A stretch of DNA of 62,807 bases, counting the filler, from Sluysia triapertura (Eukaryota): assembly GCA_046118255.1 (NCBI GenBank). It is 5 parts of 5 records of this genome, joined end to end, with 100 filler letters (N's around TTAATTAATTAA, not from the genome) between each part and the next. Parts side by side here need not be neighbours in the genome. Positions count along the whole stretch, not along the records: positions 28,162 to 39,825 come from JBJNIA010182325.1; 4 more parts are not named here. The stretch is one strand, 5' to 3'. A model generated the notes under the pieces. The model saw only the letters and a program-made list of their open reading frames with translations, made no database searches and had not been told where the DNA came from. Position 1 is the first letter of the stretch, and each line of letters starts with the position of its first letter. Below, piece by piece: positions 26,821-39,825 of this stretch. Position numbers and translations under genes: made by a program.

Positions 26821-28192
26821 TAATTCATTTATATCTTATCTCATTTATTTTTACATAGAAAAACTACTAAATAAAATTTTATTAAAAGTCATTATCTTTT
26901 TAACTCATTAATATTGGTTTAAATTCTGCTTCCATTTCTTTCATTTGCTTGATTTGTTTTTTATCCTTCAACAACCAATGATTAATGATTGATGCATTAG
27001 GCATAAATAATATTCTACGGTAACTATAATTGAAGTCATATTAACATTCACTATCGAAATGTTCTGCATAGAAATTAATTTTGGCTGAACATTAGCTATT
27101 GTAACTAAATACGAATTCACAATAATTTTTACACAATTCGTAACAGCAAAAGATTCAAAAAATTTAAATGCTGATTATTATACTAATTTAGTCGAATGTG
27201 TAATAAAAAGGAGTAAGTTTTTATAAGATTCTGGAGTGATTATTTTATAATTTGTCTACTTAACCTAATATTCAAATAAAATTTGTTGCGGGTTCACATA
27301 CAATGTACATTTAATGCGCAACTTTGTACAAGGCTACGTAATCGCAGGATTTGTATCTGCTAACCAAGATTCTTCGACAATATCATTAAAGAAAATATCT
27401 CTTTCGATCTACAGATTCAATAACCTACTTTAACAATTCAAAATTAACTAAATAACAACAATAAAAATATATTAATTATAATTATTGATATAAAAACTTC
27501 TAGATATTTATATAAATAAATGCGAAAGACGATAGTTATCTTAATAAATATCTTAATAATTTGAATGTGATTTTATATCTAGACTTCAACTAGATTTCAA
27601 AAATTGATTTTGAGTAAAGTTTGTATCTTCACTTGAGGAAGACAAAATCCTACTATAAATAAAATTAGAAAACCTAATATCAAGCGTTACTTTAGATTCC
27701 AGCCAAGAATTTATTATTCAACGAAAATAAAATTGTTTTCGTTAGATAATCTATTCATTAGATAATCTTTGAAAATCTTCAATTACAACTGTTCTTCTTA
27801 TCACACTATTAAAAAAACTTTTCAAAATGTTTTTTGTATTTATTAAGACATCTTTATTTAAAATATTATTGTGTTGGAGTTCACTCAATCTTTAATTTAA
27901 ATAGTTTTCTACTTTCGTTAATAACGTACATTAACATTATTTATATTAAATCTAGAAAAATAATTTTTTATTATTCCGTTATTTGGACAGATTCAACATA
28001 TTATTTGCATTAAATCTTGAATTACATTACCATTATTTACTTAGTCAAACTTGGTCAATTANNNNNNNNNNNNNNNNNNNNNNNNNNNNNNNNNNNNNNN
28101 NNNNNTTAATTAATTAANNNNNNNNNNNNNNNNNNNNNNNNNNNNNNNNNNNNNNNNNNNNTCGTGGTGTTGTTGTAATATGGTTTTGTATT

Positions 28193-28249
<57 letters not shown>

Positions 28250-28465
28250 ACGTAAAATTTAAAAATGTATTGGCTTTTTCTAAACTGAACTTCGTTTATA
28301 TATTATAATTTTATTTATTCACTCCAATATTGGCTTTTTATTTTCGCATAATTTTATTGATTTTATTAAATATATCATTATTAATTTGATTTATATATCG
28401 ATTATACATAATTAAGTTATATTTTGTTTACAGTTTTTAATTATTTAGTTACAAATTATTTAACA

Positions 28466-29064
28466 CAGTCTTCAATGCTTTTAATTCTTACATATTAACT
28501 TAAAAAGCAATGTGCAAGAAATTAAATTATTAAGAAATGAAAAATCTAAATAAAAAGTTATTAAACAAAATTTTCGAGGCATGCAGAAAATTTATTTAAT
28601 AGTTTTTTCTTTCCTTTCTAAGTAAATAATAAATTAAATATAGTTTCTTAGCAGAGATTAATTTTCTGATAATTACAGTCTTTAAAAATAAAACAATGAA
28701 TCTTTTGAATGTTGTAATGTTGAAGCATTTATATGTGCACATTTTTGGCTTTGTTAATAAATATTATGTTAAGTTGCATAGATTTTAAAATGTGTTAAAA
28801 AAATCTAACTACAAAAGCAAAATAACAAGTTTTCGCATAAAACTAAATTTTGACATTGAGTTAAAATGGGTAAATTTTTTATTTTTAAAGATTTTAAATT
28901 AACAAAAAATGTATCTCTATTAAGCAAATACATTTAATTTATTATTTACATAGAAATGAAAAGCAAATAAAAAATAAATTTTCTCCCTGCCTCGAAAGTT
29001 ATGTTATTTAGATTTTTCACTGTTTTAAAGTTAATATATACAAATTAAAAAGCATAGAATACTG
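28466..29064. mobile_element. Foldback/MITE with long (~130-bp) imperfect inverted arms
   Basis: Three inverted matches: cagtcttcaatgctttttaatt vs aattaaaaagcatagaatactg; gaaaaatctaaataa vs ttatttagatttttc; ttttcgaggcatgcagaaaatttattt vs aaataaattttctccctgcctcgaaag. Confidence 0.75.
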
Positions 29065-29419
29065 CGATAATTAATATTCACTTTTTCGAAATTTAAAAGT
29101 GATCTTTAAAAAATAAGTTAAGTTATAAGCTTATTTGAATTAAATTTTTAATATTTAAGCGTTTCTAATATGTCGTATTGACTATTTTGCATAATAAATC
29201 TAATTATGTGTAATCACCATAAATAAGCATTTTATATGCATTTAGATTCATTTCAATTTTGATAAAAACCAATGCTATTGTCTGTAGATAAAAGTAATTT
29301 TGATAATTAACTTATATTAGTAAAGAATTTATTAATTATGCAAACAGTACTGAAGTATTATATATTATGATTACATTATGTTATTTATGCAATTTTGATT
29401 AAAAAATTATTATTGATAG

Positions 29420-30382
29420 AATCAATACTACTTAATGATCATTGTTATGGAAGTAGAAGATGCTTTTAATATCAAATCTTATAAATTCAACGATATAAAA
29501 CTCAATTTTAATCTAAATAATACAGAAATTATTAATAATAAAGTGGCAAGAAGGTTTTCTGTACATGAAGATATTGAATTTAGAGATCTGGATATATTTA
29601 TTACAGCGAAGTGCAATATAAATTATTATCCCGAGTATCAGTGTACGAAACAATGTATTGAAGAAAATACTTTTAAGTGTGATAAAAATGTCAACAAAAT
29701 TTGTTCAAAAGATTACATATATGAATCTATAACTAAAGAATGTAATTACGATTTCTGTACCAAGACAACTGAAAAGTGCCAAAATTTTGCTCCCTGTAAA
29801 AATACTGAAACTGGTATTCGATGTATTTGTCCGAATCATTATAGAGAGAAACTTTGTGAAATATTCAATGATCCATGTTTACAATATAAATGTAACAATG
29901 GTACAACGTGTCTATTCAAAAATAACAGAATAATTTGCCAGCCAAACCATAATATTAGAAAGTCTGAATTGAATTTTAACGACAATTTGTACTTTCTTAT
30001 AGTAATAATTGGACTAATTGGATTTTTATTCATTTTCATCATTATTTTCTTTGTGCTTTATTCAAAAATTCTTTTACAAAAAAGTAACTCGGATGATATT
30101 TGGAATGATTTTCCTGAAGTTCAACAAATGAATCCAATTTTACCTAACAAATTATTACATTGTTCGTTTATTAATTTGATATTCTTATTATATTTGTTTT
30201 TTTGTAAATTAATACATGTTGCATTTTATTGTGCGTTCAAAATGTTTTATTTGTTAGTTAATTCGGGCCTTAAGCCCTTTTTGATGAATTTTAAAGTTGA
30301 ATTAATTAGCAGTTATAGTTTAATAATTTTTAAAGTTTTAAAACAAAAAAATATAATGTTAAGAATAAGATTAAATCATTAA
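29420..30382 (+). CDS. Delta-like DSL + EGF + transmembrane protein (divergent; upstream exons unresolved)
   Basis: Acceptor AG at 29418-29419. A 6-Cys DSL-like unit CNINYYPEYQCTKQC...FKCDKNVNKIC...C is followed by one full EGF, one partial EGF and the hydrophobic segment LYFLIVIIGLIGFLFIFIIIFFVLY. Confidence 0.7.
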   Translation, partial: NQYYLMIIVMEVEDAFNIKSYKFNDIKLNFNLNNTEIINNKVARRFSVHEDIEFRDLDIFITAKCNINYYPEYQCTKQCIEENTFKCDKNVNKICSKDYIYESITKECNYDFCTKTTEKCQNFAPCKNTETGIRCICPNHYREKLCEIFNDPCLQYKCNNGTTCLFKNNRIICQPNHNIRKSELNFNDNLYFLIVIIGLIGFLFIFIIIFFVLYSKILLQKSNSDDIWNDFPEVQQMNPILPNKLLHCSFINLIFLLYLFFCKLIHVAFYCAFKMFYLLVNSGLKPFLMNFKVELISSYSLIIFKVLKQKNIMLRIRLNH

Positions 30383-33348
30383 GAAGGATCAAATGGTCCA
30401 TGACGCTCTCAACACTTTATACTCATTTTTGTTTTTTGTGTTTTTATGTGAAAATACTCGTCTTTTTACACAAATTTACTTTAAAAGTTTCAATTATGCT
30501 TTAAATAGATAATAATTACTTGTGAACTATATTAATTTATTAAATTGGTCCCATGATTGTTTAACAATTGCAAGAATTGAAATTTATAACTTGACTCATA
30601 ATATACAAAGTAAGTAAATACAGATGTTTGGATTTATATTCATTTTCCTTTATGTTACGGCATTATATTGTATTATATTACGAAATTTTAACAAACTCAA
30701 GGTTTATTTACAATATGTACGAAGTCGTTAAGAAAAATAAAAACATGTTTAGACATATTCAAATTTTTTTTCTTTAATATTATCGTCAAATTACAAATTA
30801 TTTTAATATTTCAATAATTTTATTTTACATTAATTTTAAATATTTTGCAATCAGACGCACAAGTGTGCCGAAAATGTTTTAATCTATTAAATGATAAAGA
30901 ATGAACATAAGTATGTTTAAAATGTGTATTAGTAAATTTATTTTTTTTGGCACACAAATTTTAAACTCTATGTACAGAGTCTAATATCGAAAAAAATTTA
31001 TTTTATTTTGTTTTTAATTTATTTTTCAAAAAGATTGATGCCAATAAATAAAAATGCCATGAACAATATTAAGTCAATTTGATGAAGAAATATATAAACA
31101 TGTTTGTCGACGAATTGAAATTCAAAATAGTAAAAGTGAAGAAATGAATTATTGAAATACTACATCAGATAAATACTTAGCAGCTTTTCCCGAGATGAAT
31201 GGATACATTATACAGATTCACCGATGTGTGATTCGTTACTTTAAACAAAAATTTGGTTATCGCGGTCTTAAAGCTCATAATTCGTGTTTATCAGTGTCAA
31301 AAAGTAGAACGGTTTTGTATAACATCAACGTATGATAATGAATTCATGAAATGATTGGCAGTGCTGAAAACATCTGTCATTACTGAAAATACCTTACATA
31401 ATTGTTGGTACAATGTTTGGTGATGAATTATGTTCTGATTTCGATCCTATGAAATTAGTAGATGATTTAAAATGTAAAAAATTATTTAAGCCAAACCCAG
31501 TTCGGGTTATATTAATTGAACAGTCGAACAACGAGTTAAAAGGTCATGAAGATAAATTTCATGAATTTAATTGTACTCCGATTTCATCGAAAAGTCCTTA
31601 ATTTCATCTTGCCGAAGTTCGTCGGTTTAAATGTGGATGTATCTTTAATGTATAGTCTAATATTGATAAACAGTTCAAAACTATGTTAAATAAATCATTA
31701 TTTTCTCTAGAGCTAAATTTAGGTGAGAAAATTGATCATCTCACCACCAAAAGCAACGAATTAAAATTAAATTACGAATTTCTAGAATTGAATTGATCAC
31801 TCGACTATTATTAGAGTGAAACTTTAAAATCCTATTCCAATGAATTAGTAACTGATACTGAAATATATTATGATAATCAACGGAATTATTGTGAGAATTA
31901 ATTTTATAATAAATTATGAAATATAATTTCAAAATATATCTAAATTATCTAAAAAATATAAAAGAATATCTTCAGTAATTTGGAGATAAAAATGCTCTGA
32001 AATCAATACGTGAGCGAAAGAAAATAAACCTTTCTAAAGAAAGAATTCAAACTTTCTGGAACATTTCACACTTAATTGGTATGTCGATAACCTTACGAAT
32101 AAGGTAATAGAATCGAAGAACGCAAAGATAAATAATTTTGTTAAATACTAATGAAATAAAAACAAATGGGCACAAACTAATACAAACCAATACATAACTA
32201 GAAAGTACAGATCATATGAATACGTTATATTGTTATATTATATATATTGTAATATATTGTTTCATTGTAATTTAATTTATTAATATTTTAAATATTCTAA
32301 TATTAATTTTATATAATTTAGTATTGTAATATTAATTTAATTGAAAAATAACAACTATTGAAATTATTAGTAAATTAGAAAAATTGAAATTATTAATGTT
32401 AAATTTTATTATCAAATGCATATGTAAAGTATTATGTAAGTAATTTTATGTAAGTGTTTGAAATATATTTATTGTCGTAAAGTTAGAATGCGAAATATAT
32501 TGTCATAAAGTTAGAAATTAATTGAAATTGTCATAAATTAATTGTCATTAATTATTGTTTTTATTGAAATTATTGTTATTATTACTTAATAATATTACTA
32601 AATAAAACGACATTATTAAAAACATTATTGTTTTTATGGTAATCAGATAACCAAGATAACCGATATCATTTGTTTATTTAGAAACAGACATCTAGTATAA
32701 ATACTTAATACAAATTCAAGAATTCGCACTGCAATTTTTATAAATTTAATTTTTACCGGCGAGATATTGTTTACATACTATACTTCAAAAAATTATTATT
32801 TAAATTGATTTGGATCAAGCGAGATATACTTTGTCACATTACTTAAATCAATTTGATTGCTATTCTTTTTCTGAATCGTTAGTTTTTACATATTAAGATG
32901 ACAATTTTATATAAAAATAAATTGAGCTTAAAATTTAACCAAATTTCTTGTAAAGTTTAATTGCTAAATAAAATCAGTTTTGTACTAAATTTCGGAATAT
33001 AATATTAATTAGAAATTAATATTAATAATATTATATTAGAATTATACTGTTTTTTTTGGAAATAACGATTAATTTTTAAGAACACTTTGTGTAATCATAT
33101 TTTGTAGTCACGAATAATTTTTAAGAACAATTTGTATAACTATATTTTGTAACCACAATAATTTTTGGAAATAGTGACATTTTGATAATTGTATACTGTC
33201 TAATCGTGTTTTTATTGTTGATTAATAAGTAATTGTATTTTAGTGTTACTTTTTAACTATATAATTATAAGTGTACTTTACGGTAACAAGAAAAATCTAA
33301 TATCTATGAATAATAAATAAAATCAAAATACTACTAAAGCAACAATAC

Positions 33349-33434
33349 CTCAAATTTTTCCATATTACTCTTTCGATGCTGACATCTATGTGCTGGCCTT
33401 TAAGTGCGTAAGTCCAGTGGCATAGAGGACTCAC
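33349..33434 (-). repeat. Structured dispersed motif, copy A
   Basis: Reverse complement reads GTGAGTCC-TCTATGCCACT-GGACTTAC...CATAGATGTCAGC, homologous to 36167 and 33855. Confidence 0.8.
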
Positions 33435-33854
33435 AGAAGAGATATTAACAATTATAGGAGCAAAAACAAAGTAGCAAATTTTCACATAATGTTATCAAAC
33501 GATAGTGATGTTTTTTACAATTATACAATTGTGAGAGCGTTAAATGATAATATAGTTATAGAATGATAAATTTTGATAGTCGATGATATATCCTATAAAA
33601 TTATACAAAATTAATTAACAATTAATTAAGTTACTAATTAGGTTAATTAAATATAAACGAAAACTTAAAAATAAATAAAGAACAATTAACAAATTATTAG
33701 ATAAATAAAGAACATTTTAAAGATTAGTGTAAGCTAGTCTTAAACTCATTTCAAAATTATAATCAAGTCATTTTATTGTCATAATTTATTTATTATTGTT
33801 GTATTTATATTGTGAGAAAGTTAAAGTGGAATAGAATAAAAAGCCTAGCTTAAA

Positions 33855-33905
33855 GTGAGTCCACTAAGGTAGTGGGCTTACCTGTTAGGGCCAGCCGTTG
33901 GATTT
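33855..33905 (+). repeat. Structured dispersed motif, copy B (diverged)
   Basis: GTGAGTCC-ACTAAGGTAGT-GGGCTTAC followed by ctgttagggccagc. Confidence 0.7.
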
Positions 33906-34004
33906 TCTATTAAAAGTTTTTTTTACAAAGTATGTGGAGGTTCTAATAGCTGTTATGCTGTAAAACTCTTGATATCTTATTAATACTGAAAATTTAATTT
34001 AATA

Positions 34005-34180
34005 GATTTTAATAAGGTTCTTACTTCGAACCTGGAGTATTAATATTTTAATAAAGTTCCTAAATAGAACCTTTATCAATTACAAAAATGATTTTAATTA
34101 GATTCTAAATAGAATCTTTAACAAATTTTTTGAAAATATTTTAATAATTGATTTTAATAAGGTTCGTACTAGAACCTATA
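34005..34180. repeat. Array of four short hairpin repeats
   Basis: ATTTTAAT(A/T)A then AGGTTC..GAACCT-type palindromes at 34015, 34054, 34100 and 34160. Confidence 0.75.
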
Positions 34181-36166
34181 ATGTTAATAATAAGCAATTC
34201 AAATTATAATAAATTTATTACAAAAAAGAATTCTATACAATTCCATATACTATGATAATACCAATATACTTTAAGTAGATTATGCAATAAATAATCTTCA
34301 CTCAAAAATATTAAATAATAAAGTTTAATGTGCTACCTTGAAATATTAGCAAAAGTTGAATTAAATGTTTAGTTGATTTTAGACAGGCAATTTTAAAAAT
34401 TGCAAAGTACTTATTAATAAAAAACTAACGACAATCGTAGTGATAGCAGGTCTAATTCTTCGACAAGGAGTTGTTAAATATCTCGACGTGGATGAAATTC
34501 AACGTGGATCAAACTTTTTAAAGACTTGAAAAACTTTTGTGTACAATTTTTTGTGTGTATTTGTGAAATTTCTTATTGTTTGTTTTTTCAGATGACCTTG
34601 TGGCCGTTTAAAACAATAGTTTAATTATATTTTAATACTTTTTAAATAAATGCTTAATAATTTTTTGTAAAATAAATGCTTAGTTTATCATATTTTAAAT
34701 AAAAAATTAATGCTTTATCATATAATACATTATTTTATTTAATAAATTATAAATTCTTACTTTAAAGGATTAGACTCCAAAACAAGAGATATAAATAATC
34801 AGTAAATAAATGTGCAAAACAATAAATTTCAATAATTAAATAATCAATAAATGAATATAATTAGTTTATAACAAATAATCAATGATTTAGAATTAGTAAA
34901 TGTGTTTATAGTTACAAAATTTACACAAAATGGACATTAGTCATAAGATTTGCAGCACAAAATTTATCGTCATTAGTCATAAATAATACACAAAATTTAA
35001 TCATCATCACAATATATTTTAATCGTGTCTTAATAATAAATTGTTAGAATTTCATTGATTTTTATTATTCATTTTTAGTTAACATAGTGGTTTGTCTTAA
35101 AAAGTGACCTTCATTTAGTTCGATTATACTTTTTTCATTTTATAAATACGTCTTCTAGTAGTACAGTATGAACGAACCTAACTAAGTTATATCATTTTGT
35201 TTAAAAGTTAAAATGAAGAAAATTACTTTACTAATAAGTTGAACTTATTCAGCATGCGATTGTTTACCAAATTATTATAAATTTAAATTTTGTTTTTATT
35301 ATTAATGATTGTTTATTAAATTAAATTCAAAGTTATTTAAAATAAATCTAAATCAAGTCAGCAACCCATAATTCCTTTTCAAATTTTAGAAATAAGTAAC
35401 AACTAAGATTTATTAAGAAATATATTTTTAATAATATTTATCAACTAATATTTTTACAAATACGATTCTGCAAATAAACATACAATAAAGATTTTACCAA
35501 ATTTAAGAAGTGATACTTAGTTTCAGTTGGGCTTATTTAAAACAGCCTTTAAAAATAATATAAAATTTTTCTTGTATTTTATTTACTTTTTAAACTTTGT
35601 AAAACCCTTATAGGTTAAAACTAATGTGTAATATAATTTTTATTGAATAAATGGATCTGAATTTGAATTTGAAATTACTATTGCTTGATGAAGTGAAATT
35701 AGTAGTCGAATATAATTATTGATTGCGAGAATATGACAGTGTTTGTTTAGAATATCTATTCTATAAATTTGAAAATTCGAAGTTTATGAAATCTAGGCCT
35801 TTATTAACTCTTGTATTTCCATAGGGGTTTTATTATATAAAATTCGTTTACCGGTTTTATGTACTTTTATATCCAAATTAAAGCTAGGCAGATTAAAATA
35901 TTATAACTAAATAACTTTTAAATCATTAAAATATATTTAATAATTTCTTCTTTTTAAAATCAATTTAAATTAATTTTTTTTTAAAATCTATTTAAATTAT
36001 AGTTCTAAATTATTTGTAAATTTAAAGTCACAGTTTAACTGAAGCGTACTAATACCTTTTCTCAACATTTTACTTTTAAGTCTCTAGGCCTTTTGTTCTT
36101 AAAAGTATTTTATTGTGAGAATTTGTGGAAAATAATATAAGATTTTAATTTTATGCGTTTATATAC

Positions 36167-36243
36167 GTGAGTCCTCTATGGCACCGGACTTACTTAGGGG
36201 TCGATGCATAGATGTCAGCGAAAAGTTAATGGGAAAAATGGAG
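36167..36243 (+). repeat. Structured dispersed motif, copy C
   Basis: GTGAGTCC-TCTATGGCACC-GGACTTAC-TTAGGGGTCGATG-CATAGATGTCAGC. Confidence 0.8.
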
Positions 36244-37631
36244 GTTAAAGAAAATGTTCGCAATTGTAGTTCTGCTAGCATTAGCAAGATTATGTTTTTC
36301 AAGTAATTTAAGTGCGATCTAAAAAGATCTTTTAAATCAATTTTGAGTTAATTATTACGACAAATTATCTTTTATTATGCTCTTGATTATTTTATTAAAT
36401 ATAATAATTATTTGGTTGATTGTGTATCAGAAAGAAATACTCTTAGATTCTTAAATATAATGGAACATAATATGGATTTATGTTCAATTACTTTACCTTA
36501 ATTAGTTATTCTAAATGTAATGGTGATAGAAAAATCCTTAGATTGTATCCTTAATTTTTAAGTACTTTATTATCTTCAATTTATAATAAGTTTTTTTTTA
36601 ATTAATCCACTTTATTTAATAAAACACAATGCTCGGAATTACAATAATAAACTATCAAATTTTATTATTCAATTACTATAGAGATGATACAGAAATTAAC
36701 TCAGTTTATAAAACATTTTTATACACACGAATTTAAACACTATTTTTTCAATAAAATAATATATGTAATTAAATAAGTATTTTCCTTTTGTAAAAAAAGG
36801 TTACCAAAAATTAAAAAATTTTACGTATACCTTGTAATATTTTATTATATTATCAAACTTAAAGAAAAATTTATATAAATTATACACATTTATTCTTCTT
36901 AAGGGAATAAATATAAATTAGTAAGCTGATCTTAAATTCCAATTAGTTTTTCAAAATTATGTTGTTCAATTAATTTTTTAACGTGTGATATTATCGCAAT
37001 TGCATGATATTTTTTGAATAACCTTTTTCAATTAATGATACTTATAACGCAGTTGTAATGATTATTTTCTTGTAAATATATGAATTTATTGCAAATAGAA
37101 TTTGTTCAACACTTTTTTAAACCACTTTAAAATAACTTCAAATGAAATGATATAAATTTAAAACAACTTCAAAATAACTTTAAAATAAGTATGATTTATC
37201 ACTTATGACTAAGATTTATTTTGTGAGCGTTATTTATGCTACACACTATGTCAAATGATTAAAGTGTCAAGTGATTAAAGTATAAATATAACTCGATTAC
37301 TAAATGATTAATATGTACTAATATTAACTATTCTAGATATTAATGATTTAATATACTTTTAATAAATAATAATGTTTTGATTTTGTGATAATAATAATTT
37401 ATTTAATGATTTAGTAACAACTAATATAATAATAATATACATAATAAATAATAAATTAATATTAATAATAATATTAAGAGTTAATTATGTATTATAAAAA
37501 TAATAGAAATAACGACTATTTTTTTCTTTATTTAATTAAATTTACATTATTATTTCATTAATATTAATTTAATTTACATTATTTACATATACATTATTAA
37601 TACATTTACATTACATTACATAATACATTTA

Positions 37632-37694
<63 letters not shown>

Positions 37695-37759
37695 TGTTGT
37701 TGTTGTTGTAATTATTGTAATTATTGTAATTATTGTGATTATTGTGATTATAATTATCA

Positions 37760-38520
37760 GAGAAGAGTTTTCGGCATTATCTTGCGGTACGTAAAATGTT
37801 TTTTATAGGTTTTCAGAAATTTTGATTTAATTGCTGGAATAACATTTTCTGTAATCATTTTTTATAATACACAGATGTAATAGATTCCACATTTTTCGTT
37901 ATTTTGTTCCTTTAGATATGTTCTTAGAATTTCTTTGAGCAGGTTCCTGACATACGAAAGGCCATATTCCAATTTTACTGTCAAAATAATACTTTCGATG
38001 TGTATTATAGTATGATCGACCCACTGCAGCCGTGAAAATCACTTTAATTATAAATCTTTTGCCTTTTCACTTTCTCTCAGGTTTTTCATGTAACATTAGT
38101 TAATAAGAGGGTTTAATTTTAATAAGATAAAATCATTTTTCGTCCAAATGAACATAATCATATAAGTTATCAAAAAGAAAATCTCTGTTACTGGTAAGCA
38201 AAACTGTAATCTTTCCAATTTAATTTTTTTATCCGTTAAAGTAGGTTTAACTATAGAAGATATTCGCTTAAAACAGTTTTGCTGTTTTAATATATCAAAC
38301 AAAGTTAATTTTGGAATATTAATAGCGATAGACTGTGAATCGTTCCTCGACGAACTAAATTGTCAGAATAATCTTTTCGTTTTCCGCATTTATTTTTCTT
38401 TTTTGAAGAAACATCGACAGATGTTTTACCTTTTATATATTGAGCTTGTGCTGTACGGTCAATTTTTTATATTTAGCATCTCTTTAAGTTTATCCATTTT
38501 TCTTCGGCATTTTCCATTTT
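37760..38520 (-). mobile_element. DD39D (plant-mariner-type) transposase pseudogene
   Basis: Motifs VDVSSKKKNKCGKRK, VKPTLT, YDYVHLDEK*FY, KSKRFIIKVIFTAAVGR, FDSKIGIWPFV, PAQRNSKN, VIPAIKSKF and QDNA, with frameshifts and stops. Confidence 0.85.
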
Positions 38521-39751
38521 CAAATCACAGCGGTGTCTATTTTATTTATCTTTGTCAAGTTCTTATTTTACACGAACACAATACCTGTCAATTAGGTTAT
38601 GTGACATTTAATTTTTACAATGGTAATATAATGAATATTGCCACACGTTTCGATAGTCTTCATAATCTACAATTTTTTTTGAAATGCATACTATATTTCC
38701 AGACAAAGGGAGTATCTTTTATTGACCAAGTAATAAAAGTTAATATAAAAGTAATTGAAGAAAAACAGTATAAGTAACCAAGTTAATTTATTTATATTTA
38801 AAGCAAAAATTACTAATGGCCAATTCTGCGTTTAAGGTTATGTTTCATTTATCTTATCAACATTTAAATCATGTATGTTAATAAATCTTAGTTAAGTAAT
38901 AGTTTTTGTTTGAGTGTCAGACTGACGCACTTCCATCTCTTACATCAGAGGCGAATTCCAACTTCAAGTCGAAATAAAATTAATTAAAAAAACTTTCAAA
39001 ATAACATTATTATTATTAATTATTATTATTATTATCATTATTGTTGTTGTAGTAAAATACTTTATGTAAATTTATTATCAAGTCTTAACTCTTCTCAAAA
39101 TTTATTCTTTATAGTCCTTTTGCTTAATAAAATACAGCAAAACTTTACACAGTAGAATTTATAATGTGTATTAGTATATTATGACACTCTGATTATTTAC
39201 GACTTTTAGTGTATCTTGATTTTTGATTTTGTATGTTCGCTAACTTTCTTTTATTTCTTACACTGATGTCACTCTACAATCATATTATAATTTGAATATG
39301 GCTTTATAAATTTATTACCGAACTCGTTTGATGATTTTAAACTTCCTTACTTACAACTTACTACTGTGTCGATTATAATGCTAAATTCTATTTTTTCAAA
39401 CTTTATTAGATGTAATTAATTACTTAATAACTATTTCATATTACTTATAAAAAATTTTATATTAATATTTTGTATAGTATTTTATATTACTTATAATTTG
39501 TTGTATATCATACATTTCATTAGTTCAAAAATATGACTATATTCATCATTTTCTTAATATTCATATAATCATTGGTACATTCATTCAACGATTGCAACGT
39601 TTTCATTTATTAATATTTATTAAAATGTTTATATTGGCTCATCAGGATTTAGATTTGTGCTAGCTCATCATTAAAATATTCAAACATTATAATTATAAAT
39701 ATTCATTCATATTATAACAATTCAAATATTATTTTTAAGCGATCAAATCAC

Positions 39752-39825
<74 letters not shown>

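What the first reader, a model, noticed from the sequence alone, without database searches (positions are those of the whole stretch)
33349..36243. Three-copy GC-rich hairpin/pseudoknot motif that starts exactly at a 5' splice-site consensus
Seen: in an otherwise gene-free AT-rich tract, three copies (33434-33408 minus, 33855-33881 plus, 36167-36193 plus) share a 27-nt hairpin GTGAGTCC-N11-GG(A/G)CTTAC. The stem is kept, its mismatches are G-U on one strand only (implying an RNA orientation), and the loop varies. In copies A and C the loop TCTATG is complementary to a CATAGA 13-17 nt downstream; in B, CTAAGG can pair with CC(G)TTGG. Similarity begins abruptly at GTGAGT and, in A and C, ends at AG|GT after 86 and 77 nt. 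Known: GTRAGT is the donor consensus and ACUUAC is the U1 5' end that reads it. Inference: a self-masking splice donor, an introner-like GT-AG mobile unit, or an unclassified structured ncRNA. It does not fit the hammerhead, HDV, twister or pistol cores as I recall them, and the zero-length loop 1 makes the pseudoknot geometry doubtful.
Basis: partly seen in the sequence, partly recalled or inferred. Interest (0 to 1): 0.7.

Follow-up and report, generated by a model that had tools for sequence, protein, structure and literature searches.

The report
Three-copy GC-rich hairpin unit, function unproven
Three related, non-coding, GC-rich stretches of about 80 bases, each opening with the same short hairpin, sit within 3 kb of a very AT-rich animal-like genome; they look more like small RNA or leader-exon units than introns, but no expression or genome-wide copy data could be obtained.

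Summary
GTGAGTCC-N11-GGRCTTAC occurs three times, at 33434-33408 (minus), 33855-33881 and 36167-36193 (plus), against 0 expected by chance. All three copies, B included, run 77-86 nt to GAG|GT. They are the three highest GC peaks of the piece.

New points:
- Similarity beyond GAGGT is not significant.
- B and C, and probably A, carry an upstream box (ATTGTGAGAA) 46-56 nt before the hairpin, across an unconserved spacer.
- The stem arms are far more conserved than the loop or the rest of the unit.
- The unit is non-coding.

The GT-AG intron or introner reading is poorly supported. All three "acceptors" are GAG behind a purine-rich tract, and there are no target-site duplications or terminal inverted repeats. 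The pseudoknot rests on one 6-bp match that A and C share by descent (chance 3-6%) and is absent in B. No Rfam family matches. The units do not fit a spliced-leader (SL) RNA, a Helitron end or a MITE.

Best reading (about 0.35): a locally triplicated small non-coding transcription unit with a 5'-terminal stem-loop. Rivals are a leader exon of mRNAs, or a DNA palindrome or transposon relic.

The parts
33349..33434 (-). Copy A: 86-nt unit from GTGAGT to GAG, followed by GT
   Evidence: Local alignment A-C scores 87 against a shuffle mean of 31 (sd 4.9, maximum 47). GC is 0.43 against 0.22 for the piece.
33408..33434 (-). Copy A hairpin: 8-bp stem, 11-nt loop
   Evidence: The RNA fold is -10.0 kcal/mol on this strand and -5.2 on the other.
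33475..33490 (-). Copy A upstream box-like motif (ATTATGTGAAAATTTG), 56 nt before the hairpin
   Evidence: It aligns with the box of C at the same distance in the full A-C alignment. It is not significant when the upstream regions are tested alone.
33801..33831 (+). Copy B upstream box: GTATTTATATTGTGAGAA ... GTGGAA. ATTGTGAGAA lies 46 nt before the hairpin.
   Evidence: The B-C upstream alignment has p of about 0.04 by shuffles.
33855..33939 (+). Copy B: 85-nt unit from GTGAGT to GGAG, followed by GT. It is the most diverged copy.
   Evidence: GC is 0.41.
33855..33881 (+). Copy B hairpin: 12-bp stem, 3-nt loop
   Evidence: The RNA fold is -15.7 kcal/mol on this strand and -7.0 on the other.
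36105..36130 (+). Copy C upstream box: GTATTTTATTGTGAGAA TTT GTGGAA. ATTGTGAGAA lies 55 nt before the hairpin.
36136..36141 (+). TATAAG, whose first T lies 31 nt before the G of GTGAGT in copy C
   Evidence: Read from the sequence. A and B have only loosely placed AT-rich strings here, so this is weak evidence.
36167..36243 (+). Copy C: 77-nt unit from GTGAGT to GGAG, followed by GT
   Evidence: GC is 0.47.
36167..36193 (+). Copy C hairpin: 8-bp stem, 11-nt loop
   Evidence: In the fold of the whole unit this hairpin competes with a 5'-3' pairing, CCUCUAU with AUGGAGG.
36254..36322 (+). 22-codon ORF (MFAIVVLLALARLCFSSNLSAI) starting 10 nt after copy C. It is hydrophobic and resembles a signal peptide, and a possible donor CAA|GTAATT lies at 36303. 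It may or may not belong to the unit.
   Evidence: Read from the sequence. Pfam is silent. It is not kept after A or B.

Best explanation
The three copies are paralogues of a small, non-coding, GC-rich transcription unit that was duplicated locally. Each copy has its own upstream promoter-type box (ATTGTGAGAA, with GTGGAA in B and C), then an unconserved AT-rich spacer of about 35-45 nt. The conserved body follows. It opens with the hairpin GUGAGUCC...GGACUUAC and closes at GGAGGU.

On this reading transcription starts at or a few bases before GTGAGT. The hairpin is then a 5'-terminal stem-loop of a lineage-specific RNA of roughly 80 nt, and the resemblance of its arms to a splice donor and to the U1 5' end belongs to the stem sequence rather than marking a used splice site.

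Shown here: three homologous copies; sharp boundaries on both sides; stem arms conserved far above the loop and body; more stable folding on one strand; non-coding character; no match to any curated RNA family.

Inferred, not shown: that the box is a promoter, that the units are transcribed, where the RNA starts and ends, and what the RNA does. Stabilising or capping the 5' end, or binding a protein, are the ordinary roles of such a stem-loop.
For: - Three copies against 0 expected.
- Homology A-C scores 87 against 31 +/- 5, and B-C scores 64 against 32 +/- 5.
- Similarity is not significant beyond GAGGT (A-C p = 0.70). Upstream, the B-C box gives p = 0.04, and A aligns to it at the same distance. 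Box, variable spacer and conserved body is the layout of a gene with an external promoter, not of a uniformly decaying repeat.
- The units are the three highest GC peaks of the 11.7-kb piece, 0.50-0.53 against a mean of 0.22 (sd 0.076). The spacers are 0.18-0.28.
- Variable columns: 1 of 16 in the stem arms, 6 of 11 in the loop (p = 0.009) and 43 of 64 in the rest (p = 1e-5).
- The RNA hairpin is 3-9 kcal/mol more stable on the strand that puts it at the 5' end. As DNA it is only -2.6 to -5.7 kcal/mol.
- B has turned four loop positions into extra base pairs, giving a 12-bp stem.
- A and C differ by several short indels, most of them not multiples of three (alignments). The ORF that starts in the loop of C (36178-36306) stops after 7 codons in A.
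Against: - There is no evidence of transcription.
- Only three copies are known, all within 3 kb. There is no compensatory change in the 8 conserved pairs, so the stem could equally be a sequence-specific DNA palindrome.
- The stem-versus-rest contrast is partly an ascertainment effect, because the copies were found through the stem.
- Whole-unit fold z-scores are modest, -0.4 to -2.0, and no shared structure beyond the hairpin is predicted.
- There is no Sm site and no consistent terminator or 3' box. B has a T8 run inside the unit, which argues against Pol III.
- The box in A is degenerate. The box also fits a published transcription-factor consensus (Su(H), YGTGRGAA). That would suit an ordinary mRNA promoter or enhancer as well.
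Confidence: 0.35

Rival explanations
1. The unit is a leader exon or 5' UTR of protein-coding or long non-coding transcripts. It runs from a transcription start near GTGAGT to a splice donor at GAG|GT, or, in copy C, continues into the ATG at 36254. A cap-proximal hairpin would then act as a translational or stability control element.
For: Conservation runs from a putative start to GAG|GT in all three copies. TGGAGGTT is identical in B and C. Copy C is followed after 10 nt by a hydrophobic 22-codon ORF that resembles a signal peptide and has a plausible donor at 36303. TATAAG sits 31 nt before the G of GTGAGT in C. The box matches a Pol II transcription-factor consensus.
Against: No paralogous coding sequence follows the three copies (blastn and tblastx; downstream alignments at chance). 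A and B have no comparable ORF. The donors GTT (B, C) lack the usual purine at +3. B would have to splice across or terminate before C, and A points the other way.
Confidence: 0.22
2. The feature works at DNA level or is a relic. The copies are remains of a mobile element or of a local inverted and direct segmental duplication. The conserved arms GTRAGTCC / GGACTYAC would be an inverted pair of protein-binding half-sites, for a transposase or a transcription factor, rather than an RNA stem.
For: The arms are invariant rather than covarying, as expected for sequence-specific protein binding. A and C are inverted relative to each other, as are A and B, like long terminal inverted repeats. The same piece holds another long foldback or MITE-like inverted repeat at 28552-29017 and broken ORFs that look like transposase debris. 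Palindrome-bearing short repeats follow B at 34000-34180. The GC of the copies (0.41-0.47) is compatible with neutral decay from an ancestor of about 50% GC at this divergence.
Against: A single unit has no terminal inverted repeats, and no candidate boundary has a target-site duplication (sequence). No CTRR follows the hairpin on either strand, so it is not a Helitron end. The spacer between box and hairpin is unalignable while the flanking blocks are kept. Both imperfections in the palindrome fall as G-U on one strand. B extended the palindrome through its spacer. There is no fourth copy in 11.7 kb.
Confidence: 0.25
3. One reading: the unit is a short GT-AG intron or introner-like element, or the conserved 5' end of an intron whose donor is masked by pairing with a U1-like strand.
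For: GTGAGT is a perfect donor consensus at the exact start of local similarity in all three copies. All three end at AG|GT. A chance hairpin arm would rarely spell GTRAGT.
Against: All three acceptors are GAG, and G at -3 is the least used base at 3' splice sites (established consensus YAG). The 25 nt before them are purine-rich with no pyrimidine tract. The bases before the donor are TCT, AAA and TAC, not AG. The flanks have no ORF or exon-like conservation. There is no target-site duplication. The conserved box 46-56 nt upstream is hard to fit to an intron.
Confidence: 0.08

Closest known systems
snRNA-type small RNA genes (external proximal element about 45-65 nt upstream, short structured GC-rich transcript)
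   Same: A conserved box lies 46-56 nt before a sharply bounded, GC-rich, non-coding body of about 80 nt. The genes are clustered in both orientations. The body begins with a stem-loop, as U6 and 7SK do. Insect PSEA elements sit at a similar distance (PMC1761439).
   Different: No Rfam snRNA, SL RNA, Y, vault or snoRNA model matches, even at E <= 10. There is no Sm site and no consistent T-run or 3' box. The box does not resemble the Drosophila PSEA core ATTC-CAA quoted in PMC1761439. No bona fide snRNA gene of this genome was available for comparison.
Spliced-leader RNA genes
   Same: Both are small genes with an upstream promoter element, a consensus donor GT inside a stem, and a length of about 80-110 nt.
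   Different: The sequence upstream of GTGAGT, which would be the leader, is not conserved and does not end in AG. No AT{4,6}G Sm motif lies 20-60 nt after the donor, which is the operational definition in PMC7986045. Only B has GATTTTC, without the required purine.
Introner-like elements and short spliceosomal introns
   Same: The unit starts with GTRAGT and ends with AG, has extra predicted structure, and occurs in several similar copies.
   Different: The acceptors are GAG behind purine-rich tracts. There are no coding flanks and no target-site duplications. Only three diverged copies are known (60-78% identity), not a near-identical family.
Pistol-type and HDV-type self-cleaving ribozymes (5' hairpin whose loop pairs downstream; unit begins abruptly at the first base)
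   Same: The topology in A and C is a 5' hairpin plus 6 bp between its loop and a segment 13-17 nt downstream. The 5' boundary is abrupt.
   Different: No Rfam ribozyme model matches. B lacks the second helix. The 11 nt inside the hairpin is too short to hold the P2 and P3 strands of an HDV-like fold. The conserved cores are absent.
Subterminal palindromes of DNA transposons and Helitron 3' hairpins
   Same: A short GC-rich palindrome lies at the edge of a conserved block in AT-rich DNA, and the copies occur in inverted orientation.
   Different: No CTRR lies 6-12 nt after the hairpin. There are no terminal inverted repeats on the unit and no target-site duplications. No repeat library was available for a direct test.

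Membership tests
Spliceosomal GT-AG intron / introner | 5' splice site GTRAGT | tested here: met
   GTGAGT is present in all three copies. The preceding exon bases are TCT, AAA and TAC, not AG.
Spliceosomal GT-AG intron / introner | 3' splice site YAG preceded by a pyrimidine-rich tract | tested here: not met
   All three copies have GAG, preceded by purine-rich sequence such as GGGAAAAATGGAG in C.
Spliceosomal GT-AG intron / introner | Spliced junction seen in RNA | not testable with these tools
Spliceosomal GT-AG intron / introner | Introner: many dispersed near-identical copies, often with target-site duplications | tested here: inconclusive
   Only 3 copies occur in 11.7 kb, at 60-78% identity and with no target-site duplication. 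A genome-wide census was not possible. Strict patterns found 0 matches in the metagenome and prokaryote genome collections.
Spliced-leader RNA gene | Conserved leader exon immediately upstream of the donor | tested here: not met
   The 35-45 nt before GTGAGT are unalignable among the copies.
Spliced-leader RNA gene | Sm-binding motif AT{4,6}G 20-60 nt after the donor, flanked by stem-loops (PMC7986045) | tested here: not met
   A, B and C have no such motif in that range (sequences). A has only AAATTTG at +70, and B has GATTTTC.
Helitron 3' end | GC-rich hairpin about 6-12 nt upstream of a CTRR terminus | tested here: not met
   No CTRR common to the copies follows the hairpin on either strand. 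Only B's reverse strand has CTAG.
MITE / TIR DNA transposon | Terminal inverted repeats and target-site duplication | tested here: not met
   The unit's ends (GTGAGTCC... and ...GGAGGT) are not inverted copies of each other. No duplication flanks a single unit, the A-B pair or the A-C pair. Comparison with Dfam or Repbase was not possible.
Curated RNA families (Rfam 15: snRNAs, snoRNAs, ribozymes, riboswitches, miRNAs) | Covariance-model match | tested here: not met
   There were 0 matches at E <= 1 over the piece. At E <= 10 on short stretches no family is shared by the copies. The best match is an H/ACA model on B only, 24.5 bits against a gathering score of 50.
H-type pseudoknot | Second helix between the hairpin loop and a downstream strand, kept across copies | tested here: inconclusive
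   A and C have 6 bp, TCTATG with CATAGA, with a chance of 3-6% per copy and inherited jointly. B is at chance level, and its loop bases are used in the 12-bp stem. A hand alignment gives one two-sided change (U-A to A-U), but that depends on the alignment. Loop 1 has zero length.
snRNA-type gene | Proximal sequence element about 45-65 nt upstream of the start | tested here: inconclusive
   A conserved box lies at -46 (B), -55 (C) and -56 (A, degenerate). Whether it is a PSE cannot be tested without known snRNA genes of this genome.
Mirtron | Hairpin of about 22 bp beginning at the 5' splice site | tested here: not met
   The stem is only 8-12 bp.

The most novel reading that the evidence does not exclude
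The units encode a lineage-specific small RNA or leader whose 5' end is a consensus splice donor held in a hairpin by a strand that mimics the 5' end of U1. The donor would be self-masked, or the hairpin would act as a U1 decoy, and opening of the hairpin would control whether the donor is used. The competing pairings of the CCUCUAUG segment with CAUAGA and with AUGGAGG could drive that opening.
Probability: 0.06. Interest if true: 0.7.

Novelty: new member of a known kind. Interest (0 to 1): 0.3.

Why it matters
If the units are transcribed, they would add an unclassified small structured RNA or leader family to a very AT-rich animal-like genome, where GC spikes are a practical way to find such genes. 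If the donor-like arm is functional, it would be a natural example of a splice donor regulated by an intramolecular U1 mimic. As it stands the finding is a well-defined but small and unexplained repeat family. Its value is as a seed for a genome-wide covariance search.

Tried and rejected
- Rfam at E <= 1 on the piece and E <= 10 on each copy gave nothing consistent.
- The tRNA scan found none.
- A 3-copy nhmmer profile found no fourth copy in the piece.
- blastn and tblastx of the regions downstream of A, B and C found no shared coding sequence.
- The loose hairpin pattern in viral contigs gave 34 single matches in viral contigs, taken as chance and not examined further.
- Two stricter patterns gave 0 matches in metagenome contigs and genome contigs. 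Neither collection is expected to hold this eukaryote.
- A word search with the ORF lying over copy A, meant to fish for translated copies, returned no candidates, not even the ORF itself.
- The EGF-like ORF, searched to place the organism, gave no hit.
- A literature search for the exact motifs returned only primers.
- Pfam on the broken ORFs at 37750-38700 and on the short ORF after C was silent.
- Considered and rejected by inspection: hammerhead, pistol and HDV cores; box C/D and H/ACA snoRNA boxes; a telomerase template (TTAGGG is in the sense strand and absent in A); a primer-binding site or polypurine tract of an LTR element; a bacterial promoter, Shine-Dalgarno and small-toxin reading (the piece has long ATT microsatellites and an EGF-plus-membrane-span ORF, so it is eukaryotic); and a U1 gene (CUUACCUG..AGGG occurs in B only, with no further U1 features).
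Full report
**Context.** The usable piece (28162-39825) is 22% GC. It carries long ATT microsatellites and one long ORF with an EGF-like module and a membrane span (29435-30382). It also has broken ORFs that look like transposon debris, and a long foldback repeat at 28552-29017. It therefore reads as gene-poor nuclear DNA of an AT-rich eukaryote, probably an animal. The organism could not be identified: the EGF-like ORF has no relatives in the word search.

**The observation.** GTGAGTCC-N11-GGRCTTAC matches exactly three times: A at 33434-33408 on the minus strand, B at 33855-33881 and C at 36167-36193 on the plus strand. Shuffles give 0.00 matches expected. The same pattern gives only scattered single matches, taken as chance and not examined further, in a very large viral collection, so the signal lies in three copies falling within 3 kb. 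Alignments show that homology continues beyond the hairpin. A-C scores 87 against a shuffle mean of 31 (sd 4.9). B-C scores 64 against 32 (sd 5.0). A-B is not significant on its own, at 45 against 34 (sd 5.5). A profile of the three finds no further copy in the piece.

**Boundaries and the upstream box.** Downstream of GAGGT the copies are no more alike than shuffled sequence (A-C p = 0.70). Upstream, the 35-45 nt next to GTGAGT are unalignable. Beyond them B and C share GTATTT(A/T)TATTGTGAGAA followed by GTGGAA (p = 0.04 for the upstream regions alone). ATTGTGAGAA lies 46 nt (B, 33809) and 55 nt (C, 36112) before the hairpin. In the full A-C alignment A shows ATTATGTGAAAATTTG at 56 nt. This is suggestive because the distance agrees, but it is not significant alone. 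The anatomy is therefore box, variable AT-rich spacer (GC 0.18-0.28), then a conserved GC-rich body (GC 0.41-0.47). The three bodies are the three highest 60-nt GC peaks of the piece, 0.50-0.53 against 0.22 +/- 0.076.

**The hairpin.** The eight pairs are present in all copies. There is no two-sided change; the only variation is U-A to U-G in B. Both imperfections are G-U when A is read on the minus strand and B and C on the plus strand. Accordingly the RNA hairpins are 3-9 kcal/mol more stable on that strand (-10.0, -15.7, -9.3 against -5.2, -7.0, -6.0). As DNA they are weak, at -2.6 to -5.7. Variable alignment columns number 1 of 16 in the arms, 6 of 11 in the loop (p = 0.009) and 43 of 64 in the rest of the unit (p = 1e-5). 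Because the copies were found through the arms, part of this contrast is ascertainment. In B, four former loop positions pair, giving a 12-bp stem with a 3-nt loop. These data show constraint on the palindrome and lean towards an RNA, or a single-stranded form, read on one strand. They do not prove it, because invariant arms are also what a sequence-specific DNA-binding dimer would leave.

**The pseudoknot.** In A and C, TCTATG at the start of the loop can pair with CATAGA 17 or 13 nt after the hairpin. By shuffling, a 6-bp Watson-Crick match of this kind arises in 3-6% of cases per copy, and in 22-40% if G-U is allowed. A and C inherited it together, so it counts once. The two blocks involved, GTGAGTCCTCTATG and CATAGATGTCAGC, are the longest stretches identical between A and C, which is mildly supportive. 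In B the loop bases sit in the extended stem and the best loop-downstream match is at chance level. A hand alignment gives one two-sided change, but that depends on where a gap is placed. In C the minimum-energy fold of the whole unit instead pairs CCUCUAU with AUGGAGG at the 3' end. So the same 5' segment has three possible partners, and no shared structure beyond the hairpin is predicted. Whole-unit z-scores are -1.2, -2.0 and -0.4. I regard the pseudoknot as unproven.

**Splice-site reading.** GTGAGT is a perfect donor, but the bases before it (TCT, AAA, TAC) are not exon-like. The proposed acceptors are GAG in all three copies. G at -3 is the least used base at 3' splice sites (established consensus YAG), and the preceding 25 nt are purine-rich rather than pyrimidine-rich. 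The flanks have no ORFs or exon-like conservation, and there are no target-site duplications. Read the other way, GAG|GT could be a donor ending a leader exon. GTA in A is acceptable, while GTT in B and C lacks the usual purine at +3.

**Coding potential.** A and C differ by several short indels, most of them not multiples of three (alignments). The 42-codon ORF that starts in the loop of C (36178-36306) stops after 7 codons in A and has no start in B. The unit is therefore non-coding. Ten nucleotides after C a 22-codon hydrophobic ORF begins (36254-36322). It looks like a signal peptide and has a possible donor at 36303, but nothing comparable follows A or B, and the three downstream regions share no coding similarity.

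**Known families.** Rfam 15 gives nothing at E <= 1 on the piece. At E <= 10 on each copy it gives no family common to them. There are no tRNAs.
- Spliced-leader RNA: measured against the operational definition in PMC7986045, the leader position is unconserved and no AT{4,6}G Sm motif lies 20-60 nt after the donor.
- Helitron end: no common CTRR follows the hairpin.
- MITE: no terminal inverted repeats and no target-site duplication.
- Mirtron: the stem is too short.
- snRNA promoter: insect PSEA elements sit at a similar distance from the start (PMC1761439), but the quoted Drosophila core does not resemble this box.
- The box TGTGAGAA does fit the published Su(H) consensus YGTGRGAA. This is a lead only, since about 0.5 such sites are expected by chance in the piece.

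**Search for more copies.** Two specific patterns found nothing in the metagenome and prokaryotic genome collections, which are not expected to contain this organism. A word search with the ORF overlying copy A found nothing. No repeat library is available here.

**Verdict.** The feature is real and under some constraint. The most economical explanation of its anatomy is a locally triplicated small non-coding transcription unit whose RNA begins with the hairpin (confidence about 0.35). The anatomy in question is an upstream box, an unconserved spacer, a sharply bounded GC-rich non-coding body, and a strand-asymmetric conserved stem at its start.

Interest is modest. The family is small, it is known from a single locus, and there is no evidence of expression. 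The donor/U1-mimic hairpin would be noteworthy only if RNA data showed that it is used.

Noticed in passing
window 28552-29017: A long foldback or MITE-like inverted repeat. The arms are about 28552-28697 and 28874-29017 (88 nt at 76% and 53 nt at 77% complementary), with about 176 nt between them.
   Followed up: no
window 34000-34180: Four copies, spaced 45-60 nt apart, of TTTTAATAAGGTTC...GAACCT. Each contains a short palindrome (AGGTTC N6-8 GAACCT). They begin about 60 nt downstream of copy B (repeat families D13, D15, D20).
   Followed up: partly
window 33065-33166: A 45-nt tandem repeat, 2.3 copies at 86% identity, lying about 180-280 nt downstream of copy A in A's orientation.
   Followed up: no
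window 29420-30382 (+): A long open frame with a weak EGF-like match (Pfam E = 0.002, below the cut-off), a membrane span and a short tail. The frame opens right after a TAG that could be an acceptor. The word search found no relatives.
   Followed up: partly
window 37750-38710 (-) and 31160-31600 (+): GC-richer stretches with broken ORFs. From memory they resemble mariner/pogo-type transposase remnants (for example FDSKIGIWPFV ... AQRNSKN). Pfam gave no hit, so this is only a lead.
   Followed up: partly
window 38893-38981: A fourth GC island (peak 0.48) containing the palindrome GTCAGACTGAC. It is not related to the three units by nhmmer, and no Rfam or tRNA match was found.
   Followed up: no
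window 34428-34535 (+): A GC-richer stretch (0.42) with an open frame of about 36 codons, hydrophobic then charged, ending in TGA. An ACTAAC...TAG that looks like a branch point and acceptor precedes it. It may be a small terminal exon.
   Followed up: no
window 31888-31897, 33809-33818, 36112-36121 (+): ATTGTGAGAA occurs exactly three times, always on the plus strand (8 matches at <=1 mismatch against 1.5 expected). Its core TGTGAGAA fits the published Su(H)/CSL consensus YGTGRGAA. The site at 31888 is not followed by a hairpin unit.
   Followed up: partly
window 36254-36322 (+): A 22-codon hydrophobic ORF (MFAIVVLLALARLCFSSNLSAI) lies 10 nt after copy C, preceded by GGAGGT and AAAATG. It could be a signal-peptide exon or a micropeptide.
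   Followed up: partly
window 28190-28246, 37635-37690, 39770-39825: Long (ATT)n / (TTA)n microsatellites. One runs to the right edge of the piece and one lies a few tens of bases inside the left edge. This may explain why the assembly is broken here.
   Followed up: no
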